Made by a program: the position numbers and the translations under genes. Shown here in pieces: positions 4,486 through 53,200 of a DNA stretch of 64,000 bases (positions are counted from its first letter, which is position 1; every line of letters begins with the position of its first letter). Origin of the DNA: Perna viridis (Eukaryota); NCBI GenBank assembly GCA_037379345.1, contig CM074511.1, forward strand, positions 18,600,001 to 18,664,000, read 5' to 3'. The notes beneath the pieces are model-generated. The model was not told the origin of the DNA and searched no databases. It saw only the letters and a program-made list of their open reading frames with translations.

Positions 4486-7400
4486 ATTACTAAAAGTAAC
4501 TCTTATATACAGTTAAAAAAAAGTAAACATCAAACATTCATTGAATTCAGAGAGATTTACCATAAACAATAAGTGGATGTGTTATCTTGCCAAAAGTCTT
4601 AGGGTTGGTTGAAGCTACATACATGTACATGTACCAAATTGGAAATCATTCCCATGAAAAAAAAGTCAAAGACAATGGAATATGACAGGACAGATGTCCA
4701 ACCAACAGCAGTAAAACTGAGAACCCACAAAGCTTAAAGGTGACGGGATGATACAGTAAGGACATAATAACTAAGAACATATATTTATAAGCCCGACATG
4801 AGGAGAGGGGAGGAGTTAGCTGAACTAATATAAAAAAAACCTCCTCTGCTTCTCTAGGAACACCAGCCAACTGTTAATTCTAAGACATGAAAAAAAAATT
4901 AATAAACTGATTTTGTGCCTCATTTTCACAAGAAGAACTTTAAATTCAGATTTTCCTCTAATCCTCTCTCAACCTATTTCAACCGATCAGATAACTTGAA
5001 ATCGAAGATTGAGGAAATACTCAAGATTTGAGGAAGTTCTCAACTTGAGAATTTTATGAAACCCAGGCTGGTTAAATTTTAAAAAAAAACATAGGCAAAT
5101 TGTGTGAAACATGAAAGTCCCACAAGTACTGTAATATAACAAAAACAGGTATGGTGTATATGTCGAAGAGACAATAACCTTAAGGCCACCAATTGGTCTT
5201 CCATGAATGATGAGGAAACCCTTATACCACAGGGCAGGCTGCAGGTGGCCCCAAAACATAATCATACACAGGCAGAAAGAAAGAGTTACAAAATCATACC
5301 TAAGTTTGAATTAATTTTTTCCACTGATATAACTTACAAACATTTACATTGTTGAATGTACATTTGTAAGTCTACTAAATCATCAACAGCAGATCATTAA
5401 AATAAATTGAAACCTATGTTTTATAGTAGACTGGAGATGTATTTGATGTCACAATCAGTAATGAAAAACAATTACATGTACATAATAACCACTGTTCATT
5501 AATCAACTGGTCTATAAAACTACGATTTTACATCCAACTATCTTCAAAGAAAAGTTGATTAATTTCAGGCAAAAATTCTTAATATACTAAATATATAGCA
5601 GTACCACTACAAGCAGCTATAACTCCAATAAGTAATAAAATGCTTCACAGGATGCGACTTAATATGACTGCATAGTTCAAAATCAGAATAGTTTGGGCAA
5701 TGGTAAGCAAAATATTAAAACTTGATATAACTTTTAATTGTGATAAAATGTTTAATACACCATAACTATCTGAAAATACATGTAATGAAAGTGGTTAAAG
5801 AACTTAAAATTTCAGACATACTTAAGAAATATTAAATCAATTGATAATGAGTTTGAGAAAATTCTGATTTGTTACCTTTTTTGGTCCCTTATTCAAACAT
5901 GGTAAAGACTATAAGCAATTAAATAAACCCAAACCTTATATTAATGATTTTCCTTTTGTGAAATGGAAACTTGTAGTGCAACTTCTGAGTAATTAAACTC
6001 TACTCAAGCTATAGTCAGGAGACAAGAAAAATGCTTTATTGTGGACCGAATATTCAACCCCTTATCCTAAAAGAGTTAAGGTGATAGTGCTAAAAATCAA
6101 TCTGAGTGTAACTTTGGTAAATTGCAAAAAACAGTTCCAAAACGTATTTGTTAATTAGAAAAACTGTGAGTCCACATTACTAGCTGTTACTCAACTCCTT
6201 CCCCTCAAGAATCTGAAGTCTTTCAGATGGAAAAACAAAACAAGAGGTACACACATTCAGATATTTATACAGTGCACATTGGCATCATGTGATAAAGAAT
6301 ATGTGAAAGTTTCATAAAATTCTATTCAATGACTTGAGAACTGGGGACAGACAAATAGAGGAGCAAACATACAGATAGACAGACTGATCACTATATACCC
6401 CCTTCTTTTCAAGCAACATCATCGGTTATCATAATCATCATTTTAAGGAGAGATACTGAGATCATGTGGGGCTCTTGTAGATTACTTCTCCACATAAGTT
6501 AGACTTGTAACTTCAATAAAACATAAGAAATAGAAAAATGGACCAAATCAGGTTGGCTTCAATTTAATGTCCAGTTGTCACCAAATCTCTTAATAATGCA
6601 ACACTAGTTACACACGTTTATGTCAGGTAATGTTTGCTACTTAACACTTTATATGGTAATCCTAAAAATCACTCCTATGAAATTGAAAATGACTTTGTTA
6701 AAAAAATTACTAATTTCTCCAGCCACCTTCTAAACATTATTTTAAAGACATCCAATTTTGTTCAGTACAATTGTAACTACATTTGCCTTTAAAATGTGAT
6801 GATAAAATGAAAATCATAGCAACAACTGTTCAGTTTTAGAAATAATTAATGGTTTAATGCGAGATAAATTTGACAATATCTCTTTAAAATATAGGCAAAA
6901 AGTATCAAAGCATCAAAAATAGAAAGACAATTAATCCAAATACATGGCCTAAACCTGAAAACAAGAATTAATTCATGACAGAATAAGGATATAACAATTC
7001 AATTTAATTATCAAACAACTAAAAAATAAAAAAATGATCAGCAGTGTCTCATAATGACAAAGACCTTAAAAAGTACATTTTGAAAGAGATTTGGATTCCA
7101 TCGGAAAATCAGATGACCATCCAACATTTTCAATACTTCCAAAAAAAAAAACACAAATAAATCCATTTCCAATATGATGCATAGAGTTTTCCATCAACAA
7201 ATACAAAGTACTATAGTCTATTTGATGAGAGGGGACTGAAACCCACAATAATGGGCTTTAAGGATGTAAGTACACTCCAATATGAAATCATTCAATAGTA
7301 ATTTGTAGAAATATCTAGATAAAACACTCTTTAATCTATCTAATAAAATGATATCCCTGTAGTCAATATTGCCATATGTTATATATTTGTTGTTACTGGA

Positions 7401-38019: not shown

Positions 38020-38281
38020 CTAGTCATCGAGCTGACAGAGTAGAGCCAGACCACGTTTGATCCAGTGTGACACAGGTTTGTCTGTAGGCAGTAACATAGC
38101 CAACACAAAGTTTGTAGAGTGTCCAGTGGTGGACAACACACCACGTCTCTCACTTGTTTTGTAGATGGGGATCTCATACCGCTTGTCAGATCTGTCAATC
38201 TCTAGTTTCTTGGCTGGTTTGCACCAGATAATTGGCATTGGGTCAAAAAGAATCTTAGGTAGCTGTTCAGTTAAAAGACCC
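38020..38281 (-). CDS. DNAH12: Dynein last coding exon
   Basis: [22 protein letters not shown]...[14 protein letters not shown]. Confidence 0.92.
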
Positions 38282-41200: not shown

Positions 41201-44200
41201 ACTCATTGATAAACATCTAGAGATACAAAAAGAATGGTTCATTACGAAGTTTAATTTGACTTGATTTATGAAAAGAAATGGCAATGATAGGTATATTTAA
41301 AATAGGAGAAAAAAATTCAGATATGAAGGGCATTTAAAATTCCCTTTAAGAGATTTTTCTTGTGCTATGATGGCAGAAACTAGCGTTGTGTTCAACTGAT
41401 TTTAGAACTTTTCATTATGACACATAAAAGTGAAAAATAAACAGTACAGAACAAAGAAAAATTTGTTGAATTACATTAAAAAAATATTTAAATTTAAAAA
41501 CAGAACACTTAATTATTTCATACCAAGATACTATTCACTCTACCTCTTACCTGAAGTTGTCTGACAGAGATTCTAAGATCAGACTCATTAAATCCATAAG
41601 GTATGTTCCATCCAAGAGGTCCAAATTTACGTCTCTCCTGAACCAAGGCATGGAAGAAACACAGTCCATACAGCAACTTCTCAAAATTCTGCAAGCGGAA
41701 AAATATATAGTCCTTGTCTTTTAATACACAATTTTCACGCTATCATAAAACTTTATTGATATTTCTGGCACTTAAAACTAAATACACAATCACATAGTTG
41801 AGAGATAAATTGATGAAAAAAATTTTGCAACAAATAAACTGAATTTCAGAACTATTGCTAATGAACTTCACAATAACTTGCTTTGAGAATGAATTTAAAC
41901 TAAAAAAAAAAAAAAAAAAATTATTGTAACCCTACATGTTCCTTCCCAGGACATCCGACAAAGAATTCAGCATCACTGATGGGGTCATTGAGGTAAGATT
42001 GTAGTAAATTCTGTCTAAGTCCTGTTGGTGGTTCATTGGTCATCTTTACTCCATTCTGTAATACTGTAACTGGGAACTGTAACAAATAATTAGTCATCAT
42101 AGCCATTAAATCTAATATATTTGAAGAATATCCTGCTTGGTTGATGGGACAGTACATACCCCTTCATCAAAACAATCATCAGGCCTCAGTAATATTTCAA
42201 CCTTACAGGTTATATGGTAGATCAATTTCATTAATAAACAATCAATTTTACAGGGGCAACAATAGAATTCATAAATAATACATGATAGTGGAAAAAAGAT
42301 GTGGGAAATGTTTATGAGACATCCAGAAAGCAGCCATATATAGAAAAAACAAACAATAAGAGGACACTATTCTATACCTTATCTGATGGGTAGCTGGTGA
42401 GCCACAGTCTGAACTCTGGGTGAGTATTATCTGGTGTAAAGTCCTCACAGGTTTTTTCCAGAGGTGTCATCCATGATACAGCCAAATGACAGTTCTGTAA
42501 CATTACCCAGCTTCCCTCTTCTCTGGCTTGCTGGATCATCTTAGTAGCAATAGGTCCCTGTCACGAAATAAAAATACAATTTCAATGCTCTTCAAAATGA
42601 TTTATAAGATCAAATCCTGAATTATTTCATTATTTTTATACATTGGCTAATAATTTGTTGCTTGAACACAATAGACCCTTTTGTGCTAGCTGCGGGATAG
42701 TTGATGAGCATACGTGCTCAATACACACTTCCACGAGGAAAATTCTTTTGTTCTACCCAAGCCCTATCTCACGGAAGTGTCTATTGAGCATGCTCATCAA
42801 CTTACCACAAAAGAGTATGAATTGAAAAATCTATTGACACATATATAAGGGTGTTGAGATTGTCATGGGAAACAATGATAGTTCTTGATACAAGCACTTT
42901 AACACTGGTATAACATCACACTCAATTAGTACTTTTAATATTATTAAATCATGGTATTCAACGTTTGTCCAGCCCTCTAACACATTTGTATTAATTATTA
43001 GCCATAACAACTTACCTGTCCTTGACCTAAAGAAATAGAGTTGAATTTGTTTCCTCCAAAACCTTTGTCTTCTGCAAACTTCAACAAGGCCATGGTTGGA
43101 TCAGCTCCTGGTGACAACACAAAAATCAATGGAGCACAACAGTTAGAGTCAGCATAACTCTTGGCCAAATCAAATGGTGGAGGCTCAACAAACTTCTTAC
43201 CAAGCTTATCCTTCACAAAGTTATTTATGGCTGGTATAATCTGCAGAAGAAGAGAAAACATAAAGTCCAATCTTCATCAAGCAGAGATAAAAACCTAAAC
43301 AAATTTTGCACTGTGTCACTACATGGAACAAAAAAAACCCAAACAAACAAACAAACAGACAAACAAATGAAAAAAAGACCCTTCTAACCATGTAACCTAG
43401 GCAGGTTATGAGATATTTTTAAAACAGTCCATTGCTCAGTCTGTTTTTCTGTAGTATATTGTCTTTGTTCAAAAATCCATTTATTTCTAATTTCAGTATA
43501 AAATACTACATAAAATGTCTATGTCAGTGGAAAACAAACTACAGTGAACAAAGAAAAATTTGGAACAAACCTTGTCAGGTCTGATACAACGTAAAATCAA
43601 CATTCTCTGGAATTCATTCAAGTCTGATTGGAAAGGAGCAGGTAACTCTTCATTGTGGGGCTCACGGTAGTTATAGTATTTATTCCATGCCTCCAGATTC
43701 TTCATAAAATGTTCCCTGAAGAAAAATATTGGTGAAACTCTACCTATAAGACAGCTACAGTTATTGTTTGCAGAATACATACTGTATATTGCTGATAACG
43801 TGTTTGATAAGACAAAAATTTAACTCTCAAAACAATTCTTGCATAAAATGGATTGCACCTAATGACTCAATATGACAAAAAGGAACTTGTTTTTCAAAAG
43901 ATACATAACTTAAAAGGTGTTACCTGAAACTAAATATATGGCTCAACAAATTGTCATATGATCTTAATTAAAGATATAAATATTTATATTCATACCTTAG
44001 TTTTTTATAGGATTTAAGATCAGACAGACGACACAACTCATCCCAACTCTTATCAGTCAGCCATGTTGGGGCAGGATTAGAAAGCTTGTTCTCCAAACCG
44101 ACACCTCCAGTCAGGAAGAACATGTATTCCTCTTGATCAAGTTCTTTCTTAGATCTATAACAAAAAAGGACATGAGTTAAACAGAAGGAAATGAACAAAA

Positions 44201-47200
44201 ATTGAACAACAGTGCAAACAGTTAGAATTAATAAATTCATTTATTTTCTTTTTTAAACAAAATTAACCAAATATATAACACTTAAAATTATTGCACTAGA
44301 AATAAAAATAAGATTTACATTTTTGTACATACATGTCAATACAAAAGTCAAATTTCATAAGTACAATATGGGTAAAAAATGTATTTCAATTCAAATGGAA
44401 GGATGCTCATTTCAATTAACTTAAAATGTCTCTACTAACAGTGGCACTATATCCTTATCATAACATGATATGAGTTAAATCTGAATATAATCAATGTCAA
44501 GTAAAATAGTTTAAAGTAAATTAAAGATACTGCATGCAATGAACAAACAATGTAACAAATTTGAAACATGCGACTCAGATCATTAGAGAACAAAGCAGTA
44601 GATTTCTTCATCTTACAGGAGAACAGTGACCTAAAAAGCTTATTACAATTAACAAGCAGAGATTCAACCAAAAGGATTTATCTCCCTTGGTCATTTTTTT
44701 TTTGCAGCTTGTTGGATCACTGTATTGGGAAGAGAAATCTGCAATAGAACACAAAAAACACTCACATGAAAGGTGAATTCCTTTATAACAGAAGTACTCA
44801 GTATGAAGCCATAGATTATTCCATATAGTAATGTAAAGTCTAACCATATCGTGTGTAGTAACTTGAACCTTATGCATATCCATAATACATTTACTGATAA
44901 ATCTTGAGTTGATTAAAATATCCAACTTATATATATTAGAAGTGTTGTGATGGGATACCAAACTTATTTGCATAAGCACTACAGTGAAATTTCTATAGCA
45001 AAATTGATAAAAATCGATAAATATCATTTAAATGATCTTACTATGTTTTAAGATTTTCCTTGAAAATCTTACCATTAAAGTTGACATTAAAAGCTACCAA
45101 GCATGGGTTTAACCCAAAGAGAAAGCAAATACATCAAACAAAGCTCTATCTTTAAACTGATAGTACTACCTGCCTTTTGTTTATGTAAATATTACACCAA
45201 CAAACAAAAACAGGGAATTAATTGAACATTAAATGATACCCTGTGTAGCTGGGTATAAAAATTAAGTGTGAAAAATCATTAGGGTGAAAACTTGATTATA
45301 TCAACAAACAACAATAAAATTAACTTGACTTGTAAAAACAATATATGATGCTAACAAAATGTTAAATATGGGTAACATGTTATATATATGATTTTCAGGT
45401 TTAAAACGCTCAAATAAGAAAAAGTAAGAATATTATCACACAAACCAACACACAAGAACTTAAAAGGAATCCAACACACTTCAGTCCTGATGGACCTTCT
45501 CTACTTACTTTAGGATATTAGCAGTAAGAACAAAAGAAAAGAGAAGTTTGTCTTTCTCAAATAATGAGCGACAAACATTACAGTATAAACTGTATGTAAA
45601 GTGGTCAGAAAGGTATCTTAAACGTCTCTCCAGGATCTTGGATTTGTTGCTGAAAAAATGAAAAGATGATAGCAGAGTAAGAATATTGTGTTACTAGCCA
45701 AGTAGTCTGTTCTCCACAGGGCACCACTGAAAGATCTGATACAACATTTTACATGCTGATGTTAGTGCTACTAGAGTATTTATTCACTTGAACCATTATC
45801 TCAAGAAGTCAACAACATCAGAGTTTAAATTGTCTAAATTGTATTTAAGTGAGGATAATCAGCATTCAATAAAAATTTTGATAACCCATAGTCCTCCTCT
45901 TAAAGACCTGATTTTAAGATATAGTTAGAAAAGTAGAAGAACAGATTTTATTATTGTAATACATGTACATGCAATTCTAAACTAATCTACATATTAAAAC
46001 TAGCCTTGAATCTACAAGATCAGGTCTGACTGATAATGTTATTGACTTCTTGATGTTTTGCTACCAGGTTCCATGCAATGTTTGATTACAGTGCTACTGA
46101 TTGATTGGTTGCTGGAAGGCATTAAAGTTCTGATTTATCTCCCTTGAAAGTTTATAATGACCAAATAATATCATACAGTAAACAAAAACATATTTATTTA
46201 TTGTCAAACCTCAATTTCAACTGTTATAGATGCTATAGGTTAAAACTGATAAGTTGGCAATTTTGTTTTGGAGTCCAAATTACCCAGTAACCTGGTAGAA
46301 GGATATAATCATCCTTTATGCCTTCCATCACTATTCCATTCTACTCCTGATGTATATATGTCTAGTGAGTGGTTCTGAGTACATTATCTACTCATTCATA
46401 CTCACAACAATAGGTTTGCACAGAGCAGGAATGAAAACACCAACTTGTGGTGAGCAAATAATGATCTAGTAATGTTATCGTATAACTGAAACTGGAAATG
46501 GTCGTTCAGGTAGCGTAATCGTCGCTCCAGTATCTTTGATTTATTGCTGTAAACAAACCAAGCCTTTTACTGACATACGGTTATCAACTTTATGTGTCAT
46601 GTAAGTACTTGTACATGTTGTACTCATCATTTTAACACTAATACTGATTTTTCACACTGAGATATTTTCAATATAACATCAAAGATGTACTTTCATCAAC
46701 ATGATCATGGATGTTTAACAACAATATAATATCATACTGATATTGATGTACCAATAAAAAGAACAAGATCAGTTTGAAGGCCTTGACAGTAATTATCAAA
46801 TTTTGTCCCTTAAGTTCTCTGCCAAAATGGAGGCATTTTTCTTTTAACCTTAAACATTGGCTTTATTCTATGTAAATTTTCCTGATATATTTGTTTCCTC
46901 TTCACACTTCAGTTTAATCTTTTTCTGTCAATCTATTAGTGATTGAAGTTATTATAAACACATACACCAATGACTGACAACATGATCTATATTGATGTTC
47001 TGAAGGAAATGACTTCATGCTGAATTTGAAGCATCAATTTATAAACAACAGCAAATTATATAGGGAGAGTATACAGGTTAGAAATTCCTACAAATAAATT
47101 GATTTGTCAATATACCATGAAACATTATTATACATCATAATTACACATAAAACATTCTAAAAAAAAAAAATACAAATAAACTGTTATCACAGATATGTCT

Positions 47201-50200
47201 TGCCTATCAAACATGGACACTATTATTCAACACTTGATTGATGGTGTCAGTGTTACTAATGATTTATATAATATTAATTCAAGCATTTGACTCCATCAAA
47301 GTGGACAGATTACTCGTGTATAGTTTATTGTTTGAATGTGTGGAACAGTGACGAAGTGATCATCTGGAGGTCAATAGACCATGACTACTGGGGCATATGC
47401 TGGAAATTTAGAATCAGTAATGTTAATGCAGCTGCATACCAAATATGAATGACCTAACATAAGTGGTTCATATCAAACTGACCTAATTTGTTGAAGTGAT
47501 GAAGTCTTCTTTAATGCATATCTTTTCACTTCCATGATATTTTTGTTTGTTTTTTATTTAATTGTACTTTACTAAAACTTTGCTATGGATAACCTTACCT
47601 TTCCTGAATTGATAATATGTACAGGTTGACAAACCATGTCAATGAATACTGGTACATAGGGTCAATATTTGGAAGATCAGCGATGGAGAAAAACAGGATG
47701 GAGGAGTGTTTGGCAATGGGACGGTAGCCCATTCTAGAAGCATCAATCTTCTGTTCTGTTTCCTCAGCAATCTAAAATGTAAGTTATCCAACATGAAATT
47801 AACCTGAACATGCAGTTAGACCCATATAAACCTAGACCATGTCCTTTATTTAAGTCTTTATGCATTTTTTAAACCATTGATATTCTACCACCTCTAATAA
47901 GTGTAGCAATTGAAAGAACATGTTTTATTCAGGTAGAACCTAGGGAACATTTGGTACATTTTTGATCATACCATTTTATTTTGGATTTTCAAAAAGTTTG
48001 CCTAAAAAAATTCTAAAGAACTGGAAAACCAATTTAATTAAATCTGACTTGGGTTCTCCTGGTACCATTATTTTTCTGGTGCCATGCCTAGTTGGCAACT
48101 TGACCATCTTTCAATAATGGTACAAATATCAAATGAGTTTCAACGTCACTATGTGGACAACCTATTTAAACATTTCCATACCTTTTGTTTCTTGGAGATT
48201 TCATCTGACAATATTTTGGAGTTGTCAAGAATCTTAATGGCTGTCTCATCCTCAAGAATGTTACCCTCTGAGGATGATAGTGTATGAAGGATCTTGTCTT
48301 CAATCTCCTTCAATTGTTTCTTATTAGCAGCACTCTGTACAATCAGAGCCTGTCTCTCTTCCTCTAACTCTGGCCTAAAGAAATAAAATGTTTCCATATG
48401 ATTCCTTTACATAGTATTTTTAAAACACACAAGTTTCATGTATTTTGTGTTGTAGACAACAACACAATTGGTGCCCATGAAAATTGTTCTTTTTACAAGA
48501 CCTTTCATTCAACAGAATTATCATTATAAGAACTGAATATTTCAGTCTTTCAAAAATTTTGTGGTTATATTCTCCTGAATTCATAACACTGAATATAGAT
48601 ATGGTCCCTTAGTTAGTTGGCAGGGTTGAAAGAAACTTAAAATAGCTACGTCAAAAATACTAGTAGTCTAGACAAGGTTTATAGAAATAGTCTAGACAAG
48701 GTTTATACTAGTAGTCTAGACAAGGTTTATAGAAATGTATCTTACTTTTCTTTAGCTACAACTATACCCAGGAGCTGATCCTCTAGACCCTCAGGTGTGA
48801 TCATAAAGTTAAGGAGTGACACCTTGACAGCCACCTCTGGTAGATAGTGAGGGTTTCTCAGTTTAGTTGTGATATAGAATTTAAAATCTTTACTGTATTC
48901 AATTACATTTTCTCCTAGTTTGATCATGTCAATGCCAGCTAAAACAGAAATAACATACATTCATAGCAATGATTCTTTGCAGTTAAGAAGGTCAAATACT
49001 ATTCAAGACAATTCTGAAGAATCACCAAGATTTATACATCTTTCATTACAACATGGCATTTGTATTTAGACCTAGCCTGGGAATAAAGAGCTTTAAAATG
49101 TTTTATCTTGACTTGACTTTTTTCAACAAATTTAAATTTGGCTTGATTAAGTTGCTTTGAGCACAAAAGTGCAGTCAGGACTCTAATCATATAGAAATTA
49201 TTACAGAATCATTAAAGATCCAACATTTCTGTGGTAGTAGTACTGCATACCTTGTTTGTACGTTTGTTTCAATAACAAAGGTTCCAGTGAAGGATCCAAC
49301 TCTTCAGCTACATTCTCCAGGAGACAGGGATATCCAAAGGTGATACAGTTCTCCAGAGTTCTCATGTAGTCAGAATCTGTCAGCTTGATGACTGCTAACT
49401 TATGTTCCTTCTCCATACTCTTGACCCATTTGTTGGCCTGACCTTGAGGATCTATCATCAGGGGCCTGAATTTGAAGAAAAACAATTAGGAAGTTATCCA
49501 TTTTATCTAATCAAAAAAATAATTTCAGACCACTGTGTTTCTAGAAGTCAAAACTGCTTACCAGCAACGTAATTTTTAAAAATGGCCATCATCAAACATT
49601 TTTGTGCATAGAATGCTGGTTTATGATTTTTTGTTAGATTTCCTAAAATTTAATTAAACTGATCAAGGGCCAACTACCATCCCCACTCTATCTAACATTC
49701 ATATTTTTAGCATTAAAATAATACAAGAAACCAATGAAATCATTTATTGACATTTTTCTGATATCTATTTGTTCCTAGTAAGTGGAGTATTGTATTACCA
49801 TCTTCTAGAATTTGCAACAATAACACCATTGTCAATGGAAAAACTGTCTCTAGGTAAACCATGGATATTCCATGCCTGGATCTTGATTGGCTCTCCAAGG
49901 GTCTTACTCAGGGAGAAGTCCTGAGAACATGGAATCTTCTTTTCCTGTGAGAGAATATAGACAATAAAAATTACAGCAGCCAGTAACTATAGCTGTAAGT
50001 GCAAAAATTAGTGTGGGTGAATGTCATTTCTAGTAAGGGATCCGATATTTTGTTATCATAAGAGCAATACCTACCTTTTCCTATGATAAATACATTAAAA
50101 CTATCAATTATTCAGTAAAAGTACATATATATTAGGAACAAGTAACTTCAATTCAATTATAGGAAAATTCTGAAAAATTTTTCTTACAATTAACATTTAA

Positions 50201-53200
50201 TAAAAAACATTTTAAAAGAAACACAACTACACATTTTTGGTGCATTTCCAAAGCTTGGGCAAAATCTACTAAAAACATATCAATTCTGGCTTCAAATAAC
50301 AGTTTTTCTTTCAAAATCTACACACTAATTTTCTAAGAGACAACCAGTGTTGTCTTATTTCTATCAAATATAAAAAAACTACGCTAAGGACAGGTGATGA
50401 AAATTAATCTTTAAAAGCAAAGTTTCACATCAAAACATGTACACACTAAATCTACATTAATGAAGAAACTATTTTCCAAAGGATATCTTTTAGTTAATGT
50501 AGGACAATTCTATCTAGAAGGAAACAAAGGACTAAGATTCTTTATAGTACATACCCTCTCCTATTTAGTAAGATAAAACCAGGAATAAAAAAATTGTTAT
50601 ACAATCAGAGCTCATAACAGAAGAAACAGGTAACTATACAATATTTTGTTTATACTTTACATAACAAGATTTCTTTTCATCAATGAATGAAGAAAATCCA
50701 TAAAACTGAAATAATACTTTCATCGAGTTTGATCACATCGAATCAGCAAAAATTTTGAATATAAGATCATTCTAAACTTACCGTACAAACTTTAACCCAA
50801 TCTTTTGTGCATTCATCTCTGAATGATATGGTGAAGGGACCAAGGTAGGCAATAACACCAGCAGCAATCAACACATCACCAACTAAATTATCAAAAATAT
50901 TCTGCAAGTTTGTAGCAGCTACTGTCCATCTATCTTTCTCTCCTCCAAGTCCACCAATCAGTTTCTCAGCTCTTTCTAATTTCTTGGCACACAAGTCAAC
51001 CTGGAACTCCAAATTTTCTTTCTTTTCAACCATTTCCTGGAATGTGGCACGCAGATCAGCCAAGCGTTTCTCAACTGCTGCCAATTCAGCACGTTTGGCA
51101 TTTAGCAGTGTCATTGTCTTGTTCAAGTCATCTTCAGCTTCTTTCAAAGCTATCTTCTTAGGAGCTACCACCTTTGCAACTCTATCATATATCTCCATGG
51201 CCAAGATCCACTTACACAGACCTTCAGCAGCTGAAGAAGCATTGGCTACCTTGGCAGGGTCAAAATCTGGGTTGGTAATGAATTCCTTACGAATCTTTGT
51301 CATTACATGTACCTATCAAAGATCCAGAGATTTGAATAATTGTAAATTTGAAAGAAAAAAACATTTCGTTAATATACATCATGACATGGAAATTGATTTG
51401 AGTAAATAGATAGAACTAAATAAAATGAGCATTTCATTCCCTATTATTAAACTAAATCTATAAAAATTAGAGAGGATTTTACAAGGAACAACAGGTATGC
51501 AGAAATTGGTAAAACTGGAAGTAAATAAACTGTAATATAAAGAATCCTTACGGTAAAATCCAGATTAGAAAATATGGATACCTGCCAAAAAGAGGAAGAA
51601 AATCATCCCTGAAAAATGAATGACCTCACATATATTATCAACATCTCCTATACTCACGGGAATATTATCTCTGTCATAAGCTTTCAGATTAGCCAAGAAG
51701 CTCATGTCACCCAACACTTTCTTGGATGGTCCCCAGAAGTCTAGAATCTTCTGTCCTGGTTTGTCTGGGTCATTGACCCTATCAGGTTTAATGTCCTTCA
51801 TTACACAAACAGCAGCCATCACAAGTTTGACACCAGGTGGGGGGTTCTTCATAGACTTTACAATGACAATGTCAGCAGGCTATTAAATAGAAACAGAATG
51901 TCATTTACTGAAATCAGTAAACGATCCCAGTTTGCTACTCGATCTATAAGAAAGTTAAATTCAGTAGAATAAAAAAGTTTACTGTCATCTTTAACATGTT
52001 TAATGCATAAAAATAAATAGAATTTTTATAACATTTCCAAATCATCCTTTTTTTAGAACAATTGATAATACAATCAGCTACTTCTGAATTGGAGGGATGA
52101 AACATTTGTCTAATAAATATGCTGTCTGGATATCAAGCATAGTATCTAGACATTTGTATACCTTCAGGGTATCCAGAGCAGCTAGGGCAGCTTCAAGAGC
52201 AGGTATAGCTTCAGCCAGTTCAGCTTCACATTCATCTTTCAATGCCTGAGCCTTTGCAGCCTGTTCATTGGCAACAGCTTCATCAGCTTTTACTACTTTA
52301 CTTGTGGCTTCTACTTCAGCCGACTCTTTCTCAATAACTATCATCATCTTTGAGTTTTCCTCAGCAGAAACTACAAGCTGTGGCTGTAGTTCTTCTAATT
52401 CTTTCTGCATGTCTGCAACCTATACAAAAAAAATAGAGTCAAACAGAAGAAAATGTTCTTGTAACTTTAATAAAAAGTAAAGTACTGGTGTGCAAATAGT
52501 CAAGTACGGTTAATAAATTCTAGTTCATGTATATACAACCAATCCCTTTTAATAGCTCAGGCAATGGCAGAATTTTTTGAATATCAAAATATGCCATATC
52601 CTTTTTGCTTTCTGTTTCAACTTTGTATAGCTGAGTCTTGGTAGGCTAAATGCCTACATTTTGAACATAAATTCTCAACACAGTTAAGAATGTAGTCTGA
52701 CAAGTAAAGAAATTTAATGCAGAGTGGATAGTAGGACCTTTAAATTTCTCTATAAGCTTACATAACAAAAGCAGATGAAGGTTGTGTGGGTTGCATTTTT
52801 TTTGCATACCATACAATATACTAAAACAACACATACCTGTGATGCAGCAAAAGCAAGTTTCTCCAGACCCACTACATATCTCCTCTTAGCCTTGGAGATT
52901 TCATCTTGTTTTGACTGCAATAGATTCTTGAATGAGTAAATCAATTCCAAGTAGGATGTTGGAGTGACATAGTTATGTCTGCCCAGGTCATTCAAAAACT
53001 TAGTTGACAGTGTCATGGTACTCTGATGAAAGTATTTGACAATCATTACAGATTCTTTCCTATCATGGTCAGATAGTTCCGTGTTCTCCAAGAATTTGTT
53101 TGCGACTCTCTCTAAAGCATCGTCAGGCCAAGACTACAAAATGGATTACATGCTTGTATTTAAGAGTTAGATTAAAATCTATTCATCCTAATCAAAATAT

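What the first reader, a model, noticed from the sequence alone, without database searches (positions are those of the whole stretch)
45509..46546. Duplicated, probably mutually exclusive exons giving two versions of an axonemal dynein motor
Seen: two 141-nt exons, both phase 2-2, both with CAG acceptors and strong donors (GTAAGT, GTGAGT), both open, 32/46 aa identical. The first 13 residues are identical while 7 of those 13 codons differ silently, which points to long-term purifying selection on both copies. Exon A keeps the usual [13 protein letters not shown]; exon B has [13 protein letters not shown] (charge change, paired His). Known: this segment follows the buttress in the AAA5 small-domain/extension region. 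Inference: switchable motor isoforms, e.g. sperm flagella versus gill or larval cilia. Because 141 is a multiple of 3, exclusivity cannot be enforced by frameshift/NMD and would need a splicing mechanism. I do not know whether this has been described for DNAH12 orthologues.
Basis: partly seen in the sequence, partly recalled or inferred. Interest (0 to 1): 0.82.

Follow-up and report, generated by a model that had tools for sequence, protein, structure and literature searches.

The report
Alternative exon pair in dynein DNAH12
An invertebrate's inner-arm ciliary dynein gene (DNAH12 type) has two interchangeable 141-base exons for part of its motor ring; RNA shows one or the other is used, never both, and at least six other animal lineages keep the same pair, so one gene makes two versions of the motor.

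Summary

- **The exons.** Exon B (46546-46406) and exon A (45649-45509), minus strand, are each 141 nt, phase 2-2, with intact AG/GT sites. They share 32 of 46 residues. Synonymous sites are saturated (pS 0.90) against pN 0.23.
- **RNA evidence.** Spliced contigs from three independent studies join the upstream exon (donor 47599) to B or to A. Each variant then joins the downstream exon (acceptor 44154). No B-to-A joint and no skip-both joint was seen. B contigs are as deep as or deeper than A contigs, and A plus B roughly equals the flanking exon.
- **Gene identity.** The gene is a DNAH12 (IDAa) orthologue. The segment matches human DNAH12 residues 3179-3224, in the AAA5 small domain just after the buttress.
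- **Conservation.** B-type exons occur in at least six other unnamed animal lineages. They always lie 5' of the A-type exon, are always 141 nt and form one clade. Some lineages have three copies.
- **What enforces exclusivity.** This is unknown. U12 incompatibility, steric hindrance and NMD are excluded. Candidate RNA pairings exist but are unproven.
- **Tissue specificity.** Not testable here, because the samples are coded.
- **Novelty.** It is a new member of a known kind. Mutually exclusive exons in dynein heavy chains are on record, and this scan has already found other such pairs in this genome, including one in dynein-1. I found no paper on this pair.

The parts
47599..47771 (-). Upstream constitutive exon (end of buttress CC2 and next AAA5 small-domain helix); its donor after 47599 splices to either B or A
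   Evidence: 318-321-nt contigs join 48182 to 47771 and stop exactly at 47599, the branch point of the assembly graph. The translation runs into both variants in frame.
46547..47598 (-). Intron 1 (1052 nt), GT..AG
   Evidence: Joint 47599>46546 in runs X1, X6 and X7.
46406..46546 (-). Exon B, the derived variant (…[22 protein letters not shown]…)
   Evidence: 198-nt contigs consist of 27 nt of upstream exon, these 141 nt and 30 nt of downstream exon. Orthologues were found in other taxa.
45650..46405 (-). Intron 2 (756 nt) between B and A; never seen removed on its own
   Evidence: No joint 46406>45649. Only low-depth unspliced contigs cover it.
45509..45649 (-). Exon A, the ancestral-type variant (…[22 protein letters not shown]…)
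   Evidence: 198-nt contigs carry both constitutive flanks. It is 85% identical to human DNAH12 residues 3179-3224.
44155..45508 (-). Intron 3 (1354 nt), GT..AG
   Evidence: Joint 45509>44154 in X6 and X7. The joint 46406>44154 in X1, X6 and X7 removes intron 2, exon A and intron 3 together.
43996..44154 (-). Downstream constitutive exon (…[20 protein letters not shown]…)
   Evidence: The acceptor at 44154 is shown by the joints. The 3' end at 43996 is inferred from the reading frame, the GT donor and homology in L013.
47336..47359 (-). Hypothetical RNA pairing element in intron 1; partner is 46322-46345, 60-85 nt downstream of the B donor (-22 kcal/mol). Pairing would loop out exon B.
   Evidence: Duplex scan. 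Not conserved and not tested; it is only part of a modest excess over shuffles.
46316..46345 (-). Hypothetical shared pairing element downstream of exon B. It can pair with 47336-47359 (intron 1), 46106-46135 (intron 2) or 44618-44641 (intron 3).
   Evidence: Speculative.
45692..45733 (-). Hypothetical pairing elements 43-84 nt upstream of the exon A acceptor. Partners are 45230-45253 (-23.8 kcal/mol, would loop out A) and 44618-44641 (-19.4 kcal/mol).
   Evidence: The 45206-45239 partner region behaves as a dispersed repeat in the contigs, which argues for chance.
44618..44641 (-). Hypothetical docking-like element in intron 3
   Evidence: Speculative.

Best explanation
This is a true mutually exclusive exon pair that arose by an old tandem exon duplication in the orthologue of DNAH12, the heavy chain of single-headed inner dynein arm a.

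Each mature mRNA carries exon B or exon A between the same two constitutive exons. The gene therefore makes two full-length motors that differ at 14 of 47 residues. The differing residues lie in the helices of the AAA5 small domain that follow the buttress.

Exon A keeps the sequence shared by all dynein paralogues. Exon B is a derived but strongly conserved version:
- Gln at positions 18 and 20;
- Cys23 to Asp;
- Cys26 to Thr;
- Glu-Lys-Asp at 31-33 changed to Ala-His-His.

Shown here: the exon structure, exclusive use in RNA, orthology, age and purifying selection.

Inferred: the swap changes a surface or packing face of AAA5S. That would tune either the coupling of buttress and stalk to the ATPase ring, or contact of the head with axonemal regulators, giving two functional grades of the same arm.

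How exclusivity is enforced is not shown. U12/U2 incompatibility, steric hindrance and NMD are excluded. What remains is cis RNA structures and/or cell-type-specific splicing factors.
For: - **Anatomy:**
- **RNA:** In X1, X6 and X7, from three different studies, joints 47599>46546 and 46406>44154 have depth 31-44. Joint 47599>45649 has depth 20-24 in X1, X6 and X7. Joint 45509>44154 has depth 21-24 in X6 and X7 only.
- **Contigs:** 198-nt contigs contain one variant flanked by both constitutive exons. All ends are canonical GT..AG.
- **Depth balance:** A plus B depth is about that of the flanking exon contig (X6 20.7 + 43.7 against 74.3; X7 23.8 + 31.2 against 51.9).
- **No retrocopy or second locus:** none in the genome.
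- **DNAH12 is clearly the best solved match:** 75 bits against 61 for DNAH7 on exon A; 312 against 248 bits on an AAA4 exon.
- **Position:** between Pfam AAA_9 and the D6 P-loop domain, after the buttress-like coiled-coil exons.
- **Other lineages:** B-type exons lie 5' of A-type exons in L010/L011, L016, L017, L018, L013-15, L019 and L020-22 (L012 holds a B-type exon only). All are 141 nt with AG/GT.
- **Single origin:** B exons form one clade, UFboot 85 and in 88% of bootstrap trees.
- **Selection:** omega is 0.086 for L010/L016 and 0.012 for L012/L017.
- **Paralogues:** other dynein genes in this genome have a single A-like copy.
Against: - The RNA evidence is assembled contigs, which drop rare variants. 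Low-level B+A or skip-both mRNAs cannot be excluded.
- The flanks on the variant contigs are only 27-30 nt, the k-mer limit.
- Run types are not on record. RNA origin is inferred from the spliced joints.
- Tissue or stage of the runs is unknown, and the three B shares are similar (0.57-0.68), so no switch has been seen.
- The B clade has only moderate support, from 46 columns.
- No protein-level or structural test of a functional difference was possible.
Confidence: 0.87

Rival explanations
1. These are two independently regulated cassette exons rather than an enforced exclusive pair. B-only and A-only mRNAs dominate, but in-frame B+A (+47 aa) and skip-both (-47 aa) mRNAs also exist at low level, because nothing forbids them.
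For: Both aberrant forms keep the reading frame, so NMD would not remove them (sequence). No enforcing mechanism was identified. Contigs drop rare variants (notes).
Against: No such joint appeared in any of the four runs. A plus B depth accounts for the depth of the flanking exon. Conservation of identical length and phase in every lineage is typical of true MXE clusters.
Confidence: 0.1
2. Exclusivity is enforced by competing long-range RNA pairings. An element just downstream of B (46316-46345) would pair either with intron 1 (47336-47359), looping out B, or with intron 3 (44618-44641), looping out A.
For: Duplexes of -20 to -24 kcal/mol sit at these places. The region has 5 window pairs at or below -22 kcal/mol, against 0-2 in 11 shuffles. 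In a related pair of species there are conserved non-coding islands next to the B donor and inside the B-A1 intron.
Against: No intronic motif is shared across lineages. Local folds at the two acceptors are unremarkable, z -1.4 and +1.1. One partner lies in a dispersed repeat. The excess over shuffles is also what transposon-derived inverted repeats would give. The choice of elements was made post hoc.
Confidence: 0.25
3. Exon B is a decaying or noise-level duplicate with no function of its own.
For: None was found. This was the null hypothesis to be tested.
Against: B is spliced into mRNA at depth equal to or above A in three studies. It is intact and under purifying selection in at least seven lineages.
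Confidence: 0.02

Closest known systems
Mutually exclusive exon in the cytoplasmic dynein heavy chain of Schistosoma mansoni (SmDHC1; Pillmann et al. 2011, PMC3228551), with the remark in Kollmar 2016 (PMC5100056) that some DHC genes have alternative splice forms in the motor domain
   Same: Tandem homologous exons of identical length and phase inside a dynein heavy-chain motor domain, read as mutually exclusive.
   Different: That case is cytoplasmic dynein-1, at another position, and was used as a prediction example. Here the gene is an axonemal single-headed inner-arm dynein and the segment is AAA5S after the buttress. There is RNA junction evidence, and conservation was shown across several lineages with clusters of 2-3 exons.
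Muscle myosin heavy chain (Mhc) clusters of mutually exclusive exons in insects (own knowledge; named as an example gene in PMC3228551)
   Same: One motor gene produces isoforms by swapping small homologous pieces of the motor domain.
   Different: It is a different motor superfamily. The functional consequences are established there and unknown here.
Sperm-specific versus epithelial-cilia dynein paralogues in mammals (DNAH8/DNAH17 versus DNAH5/DNAH9; PMC11779644)
   Same: Possible logic: different axonemal motor versions for different ciliated cell types. Mammalian DNAH12 itself behaves differently in sperm and in cilia (PMC11949491).
   Different: Mammals use whole-gene duplicates of outer-arm chains. 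Here a single exon of an inner-arm chain is duplicated. Cell-type specificity is not shown.
MXE systems controlled by competing RNA structures (Dscam1, ATE1; PMC6071210, PMC7797038)
   Same: A frame-preserving MXE cluster derived from tandem duplication that needs a mechanism at the splicing level. Candidate long-range pairings are present.
   Different: No conserved docking or selector sequences were demonstrated here.

Membership tests
Mutually exclusive exon cluster from tandem exon duplication | Adjacent homologous exons of equal length and equal intron phases with intact splice sites | tested here: met
   Both are 141 nt and phase 2-2, with AG/GT sites and 32/46 identical residues.
Mutually exclusive exon cluster from tandem exon duplication | Each variant is spliced to the same upstream and downstream constitutive exons | tested here: met
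   Joints 47599>46546, 46406>44154 and 47599>45649 are in three runs (X1, X6, X7) from three studies. Joint 45509>44154 is in X6 and X7 only.
Mutually exclusive exon cluster from tandem exon duplication | Variants are never joined to each other and never both skipped | tested here: met
   No 46406>45649 or 47599>44154 joint was seen in four runs. Limit: contigs drop rare forms.
DNAH12 / inner dynein arm a heavy chain orthologue | Closer to DNAH12 than to any other dynein heavy-chain class | tested here: met
   DNAH12 is the top PDB match for three separate exons, by clear margins. No full phylogeny was made.
MXE enforced by U2/U12 spliceosome incompatibility | One of the competing introns has U12-type splice sites (donor consensus RTATCCTT; own knowledge) | tested here: not met
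   The donors are GTAAGG, GTGAGT and GTAAGT, and all acceptors are AG.
MXE enforced by steric hindrance | The intron between the variants is too short, or its branch point too close to the donor, to be spliced | tested here: not met
   The intron is 756 nt, with a pyrimidine tract and a branch-like TTCTTAC near the A acceptor. Branch point not mapped. In L010/L016 the A1-A2 intron is only 71-73 nt, so steric hindrance may apply there.
MXE enforced by frameshift and NMD | Inclusion of both variants or of neither shifts the reading frame | tested here: not met
   141 = 3 x 47. The junction codons are TTC (B+A) and AGA (skip-both), so both forms stay in frame.
MXE controlled by competing RNA secondary structures | A conserved docking site complementary to a selector next to each variant | tested here: inconclusive
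   Candidates were found with a modest excess over shuffles. No cross-lineage motif was found and local folds are unremarkable.

The most novel reading that the evidence does not exclude
The A/B switch is an ancient splice-level way of building two kinds of inner dynein arm a from one gene. The kinds would be deployed in different ciliated cell types or axonemal regions, such as sperm flagellum versus epithelial or larval cilia. This would be the invertebrate counterpart of vertebrate cell-type-specific dynein paralogues. The B version would alter an AAA5 small-domain surface that sets buttress/stalk coupling or contact with regulators such as the CFAP43/44 tether complex.
Probability: 0.3. 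Interest if true: 0.75.

Novelty: new member of a known kind. Interest (0 to 1): 0.55.

Why it matters
Axonemal dyneins are usually treated as one gene giving one motor. Differences between sperm and epithelial cilia are explained by paralogues or accessory proteins.

A conserved, expressed exon switch inside the motor ring of IDAa shows that some animals also diversify an axonemal motor by splicing. It also marks 14 residues of the AAA5 small domain that evolution has kept in two alternative states.

That gives dynein biophysicists a natural pair of variants to compare. It gives cilia biologists a direct test: isoform-specific in situ hybridisation or knockouts would show whether different cilia in one animal use different versions of the same arm. 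As a splicing case it is also useful, because the three simplest enforcement mechanisms are excluded.

Tried and rejected
1. **Shared intronic motifs.** A search for 10-mers shared across seven lineages found only chance hits and exon spill-over.
2. **Inverted repeats and duplexes.** The inverted-repeat and duplex scans of the three introns gave candidates. They show only a modest excess over 11 shuffles, and the choice of elements was post hoc.
3. **Local RNA folds.** Folds at the B and A acceptors gave z -1.4 and +1.1.
4. **Failed runs.** Two multiprocessing shuffle runs timed out without output.
5. **A third copy.** A degenerate third copy in the window's introns was sought by tblastn at E up to 10, word size 2. 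None was found.
6. **Naming the other taxa.** Cluster names, two paper searches on accession numbers and locus origins gave nothing.
7. **Literature.** Searches for this pair or for DNAH12 isoforms found general precedent only.
   - P0009 carries the exact human DNAH12 peptide and may be human. It appeared only in a bulk fetch and a bulk pattern count. It was left out of alignments, trees and contig look-ups.
   - Run choice was limited to one call of each reads tool, so tissue comparison was impossible.

Full report
**1. Observation**

The gene runs on the minus strand from beyond 64000 to a stop near 38023. Its open frames read as a dynein heavy chain from about AAA3 to the C-terminus.

Exon B is 46546-46406 and exon A is 45649-45509.
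- Both are 141 nt.
- Both follow a CAG acceptor and end before GTGAGT (B) or GTAAGT (A).
- The upstream exon ends …CAGGAAAG at 47599, before GTAAGG. The downstream exon starts at 44154 after TATAG.
- With the split codons, both variants are phase 2-2 and in frame with both neighbours.
- Identity is 32/46 residues and 62% at the nucleotide level.
- Of about 30 synonymous sites, 27 differ (pS 0.90, saturated), while pN is 0.23.
- The first 13 codons encode the same residues although 7 of them differ.

In a six-frame search of the whole 723-Mb assembly, the two exons hit each other at E 1.2e-13. They are the only copies at this locus, and no intronless copy exists.

**2. Gene and position**

Three separate exons each have human or mammalian DNAH12 as their best solved match:
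- exon A aligns to DNAH12 residues 3179-3224 (PDB 8J07 chain g1, and 9FQR) at 39/46 identity, 75 bits against 61 for DNAH7;
- an AAA4 exon scores 312 bits on DNAH12 against 248 for the next chain;
- an MTBD exon also has DNAH12 as its top match.

DNAH12 is the heavy chain of inner dynein arm a (PMC11779644).

In primary-sequence order, the exon at 48406-48182 ends Pfam AAA_9 (AAA5 large domain) and begins a coiled coil. The exon 47771-47599 finishes the coiled coil. Then comes the A/B exon. The D6 P-loop domain starts about 190 residues after the start of the segment, judged on a relative's cDNA fragment. Assigning it to the last two helices of that domain is my inference.

**3. RNA**

No run is on record as RNA. 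I laid four runs from four different studies on 43400-48500. Three of them behave as RNA, because they contain contigs with canonical GT..AG joints.

In X1, X6 and X7:
- the upstream exon joins B (47599>46546) and B joins the downstream exon (46406>44154), at depths 38/39, 43.7 and 31.2;
- the upstream exon joins A (47599>45649), at depths 19.9, 20.7 and 23.8;
- A joins the downstream exon (45509>44154) in X6 and X7.

The carrier contigs are 198 nt long: 27 nt of upstream exon, 141 nt of one variant and 30 nt of downstream exon. This is the two arms of a bubble in the assembly graph. The constitutive contig (48326-48182 joined to 47771-47599) ends exactly at 47599, where the bubble opens.

No B-to-A joint and no skip-both joint is listed. 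A plus B depth roughly equals the depth of the constitutive contig (X6 64 against 74; X7 55 against 52). B is the more abundant arm, with a share of 0.57-0.68.

X4 covered the region only with thin intronic contigs and says nothing either way.

Limits:
- contigs drop rare variants;
- the flanks are limited to k-1 letters;
- sample identities are coded, so tissue usage is unknown.

**4. Age and selection**

A search with the exon B peptide against 1.84 billion representative proteins returned short ORFs from genomic contigs. Eight of the top hits carry B-type features. I fetched their contigs and scanned them.

- Wherever the contig is long enough, a B-type exon is followed downstream by one or two A-type exons. 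L012, a 788-nt contig, holds only the B-type exon.
- The window, L017, L018, L019 and L020-22 have B then A.
- L010/L011 and L016 have B, A1, A2, with only 71-73 nt between A1 and A2.
- L013-15 have B, a divergent third copy, then A.
- All 28 copies are 141 nt and flanked by AG and GT. Eleven of the 12 B-type copies listed have a GTGAGT donor; the exception is L019.
- Neighbouring called genes carry AAA_9 upstream and Dynein_heavy downstream.
- Synonymous divergence between lineages is saturated, except within L010/L016 (dS 0.2-0.3) and L012/L017 (dS 0.77). In those two pairs, omega for B is 0.086 and 0.012.
- In a maximum-likelihood tree rooted on this genome's own dynein paralogues, the nine B exons form one clade (UFboot 85, SH-aLRT 74, present in 88% of bootstrap trees). 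The A exons are unresolved at the base.
- The paralogues have a single A-like copy each. A is therefore the ancestral state and B the derived one.

Hallmarks of B:
- Ala instead of Glu at position 31 in all nine B exons;
- Gln at position 18 in eight of nine;
- a charged residue instead of Cys, Thr or Ile at position 23;
- usually His at position 33.

Ala at position 31 also occurs in some other dyneins, so it is not unique to B.

The duplication thus predates the split of at least seven lineages. I could not name them. Earlier scan notes call this genome a mussel; I did not verify that.

**5. Mechanism of exclusivity**

Three mechanisms are excluded.
- **NMD.** Both-in and both-out mRNAs stay in frame.
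- **U2/U12 incompatibility.** All sites are U2-type GT-AG.
- **Steric hindrance.** The B-A intron is 756 nt, with its pyrimidine tract and a branch-like sequence next to the A acceptor.

What remains is RNA structure and/or splicing factors. Duplex scans give several pairings of -19 to -24 kcal/mol that flank B or flank A. One element downstream of B could pair alternatively with intron 1 or with intron 3.

The region has 5 window pairs at or below -22 kcal/mol, against 0-2 in 11 shuffles. That is also what repeat-derived inverted repeats would give, and one partner lies in a dispersed repeat. No intronic motif is shared across lineages, and local folds are unremarkable.

In the one closely related species pair available (L010/L016), introns are otherwise unalignable. 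Even so, about 75 nt after the B donor, a non-coding island of about 200 nt in the B-A1 intron and the whole A1-A2 intron are 75-95% conserved. This fits cis-regulated splicing in that lineage. I rate the RNA-structure mechanism at about 0.25.

**6. What it does**

Shown: two mRNA forms, and hence two predicted proteins differing at 14 of 47 residues.

Inferred: the differences concentrate in the second half of the first helix (positions 18-26) and in the turn before the second helix (positions 31-33). They change charge, from Glu-Lys-Asp to Ala-His-His and from Cys to Asp. They also replace residues (CRSLFE) that are invariant in the other dynein genes of this genome.

The AAA5 small domain carries the buttress that supports the stalk. 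In bovine sperm the IDAa head is contacted by CFAP44 of the tether complex in the prestroke state (PMC11779644). The likeliest effect is therefore a tuned mechanochemical coupling or a changed regulatory contact.

In mice, loss of DNAH12 affects sperm flagella but not tracheal or oviductal cilia (PMC11949491). That makes a cell-type role plausible, but it is not evidence for one.

**7. Novelty**

Mutually exclusive exons in dynein heavy chains are on record. SmDHC1 is described in PMC3228551, and PMC5100056 remarks in general that DHC motor domains have alternative splice forms.

This scan has already followed up several MXE pairs in this same genome, including one in the dynein-1 microtubule-binding domain. 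None of those overlaps this locus.

I found no paper describing this DNAH12 pair. It may well be present in automatic annotations, which I could not check. Verdict: real, old and expressed; a new member of a known kind.

Noticed in passing
window 47632-47666 and 48288-48326: All four runs contain a long contig (up to 3.7 kb) matching only these two short exonic patches, joined non-canonically (AT..GA) and running on into unlike sequence. It is present even in X4, where this gene's A and B exons are not covered. Most likely it is the transcript of a paralogous dynein cross-mapping on conserved codons, not an isoform of this gene.
   Followed up: partly
window 45206-45239 and 47450-47487: Many contigs from all runs match only these short intronic stretches and then diverge in several different directions. 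This suggests fragments of dispersed repeats inside introns 3 and 1.
   Followed up: no
L010:5215-5290, 5805-6030, 6948-7020 (aligned with L016): In another lineage's three-exon cluster the introns are otherwise unalignable between two related species. Three non-coding stretches are nevertheless 75-95% conserved: about 75 nt after the B donor, a ~200-nt island in the B-A1 intron, and the whole 73-nt A1-A2 intron. They are candidate splicing control elements.
   Followed up: partly
L010/L011/L016 and L013-L015: Some lineages carry three tandem copies of this exon: B, A1, A2 in one group, and B, a divergent third type, A in another. The cluster has therefore expanded more than once. The A1-A2 spacing of 71-73 nt could by itself prevent joining A1 to A2.
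   Followed up: partly
window 51658-51879 and 50773-51306 (minus strand): This gene encodes an ordinary-looking microtubule-binding domain. The exon aligns to human DNAH12 residues 2621-2694 and to solved MTBD constructs of DNAH7, DHC9 and DNAH1. PMC11949491 describes DNAH12 as lacking an MTBD, which looks like a domain-annotation gap rather than a real absence.
   Followed up: partly
window 43913-44083: No contig was laid on the body of the downstream constitutive exon, although both variant contigs run 30 nt into it. The tool warns that conserved, human-like contigs are filtered out, so this gap is not a finding.
   Followed up: no
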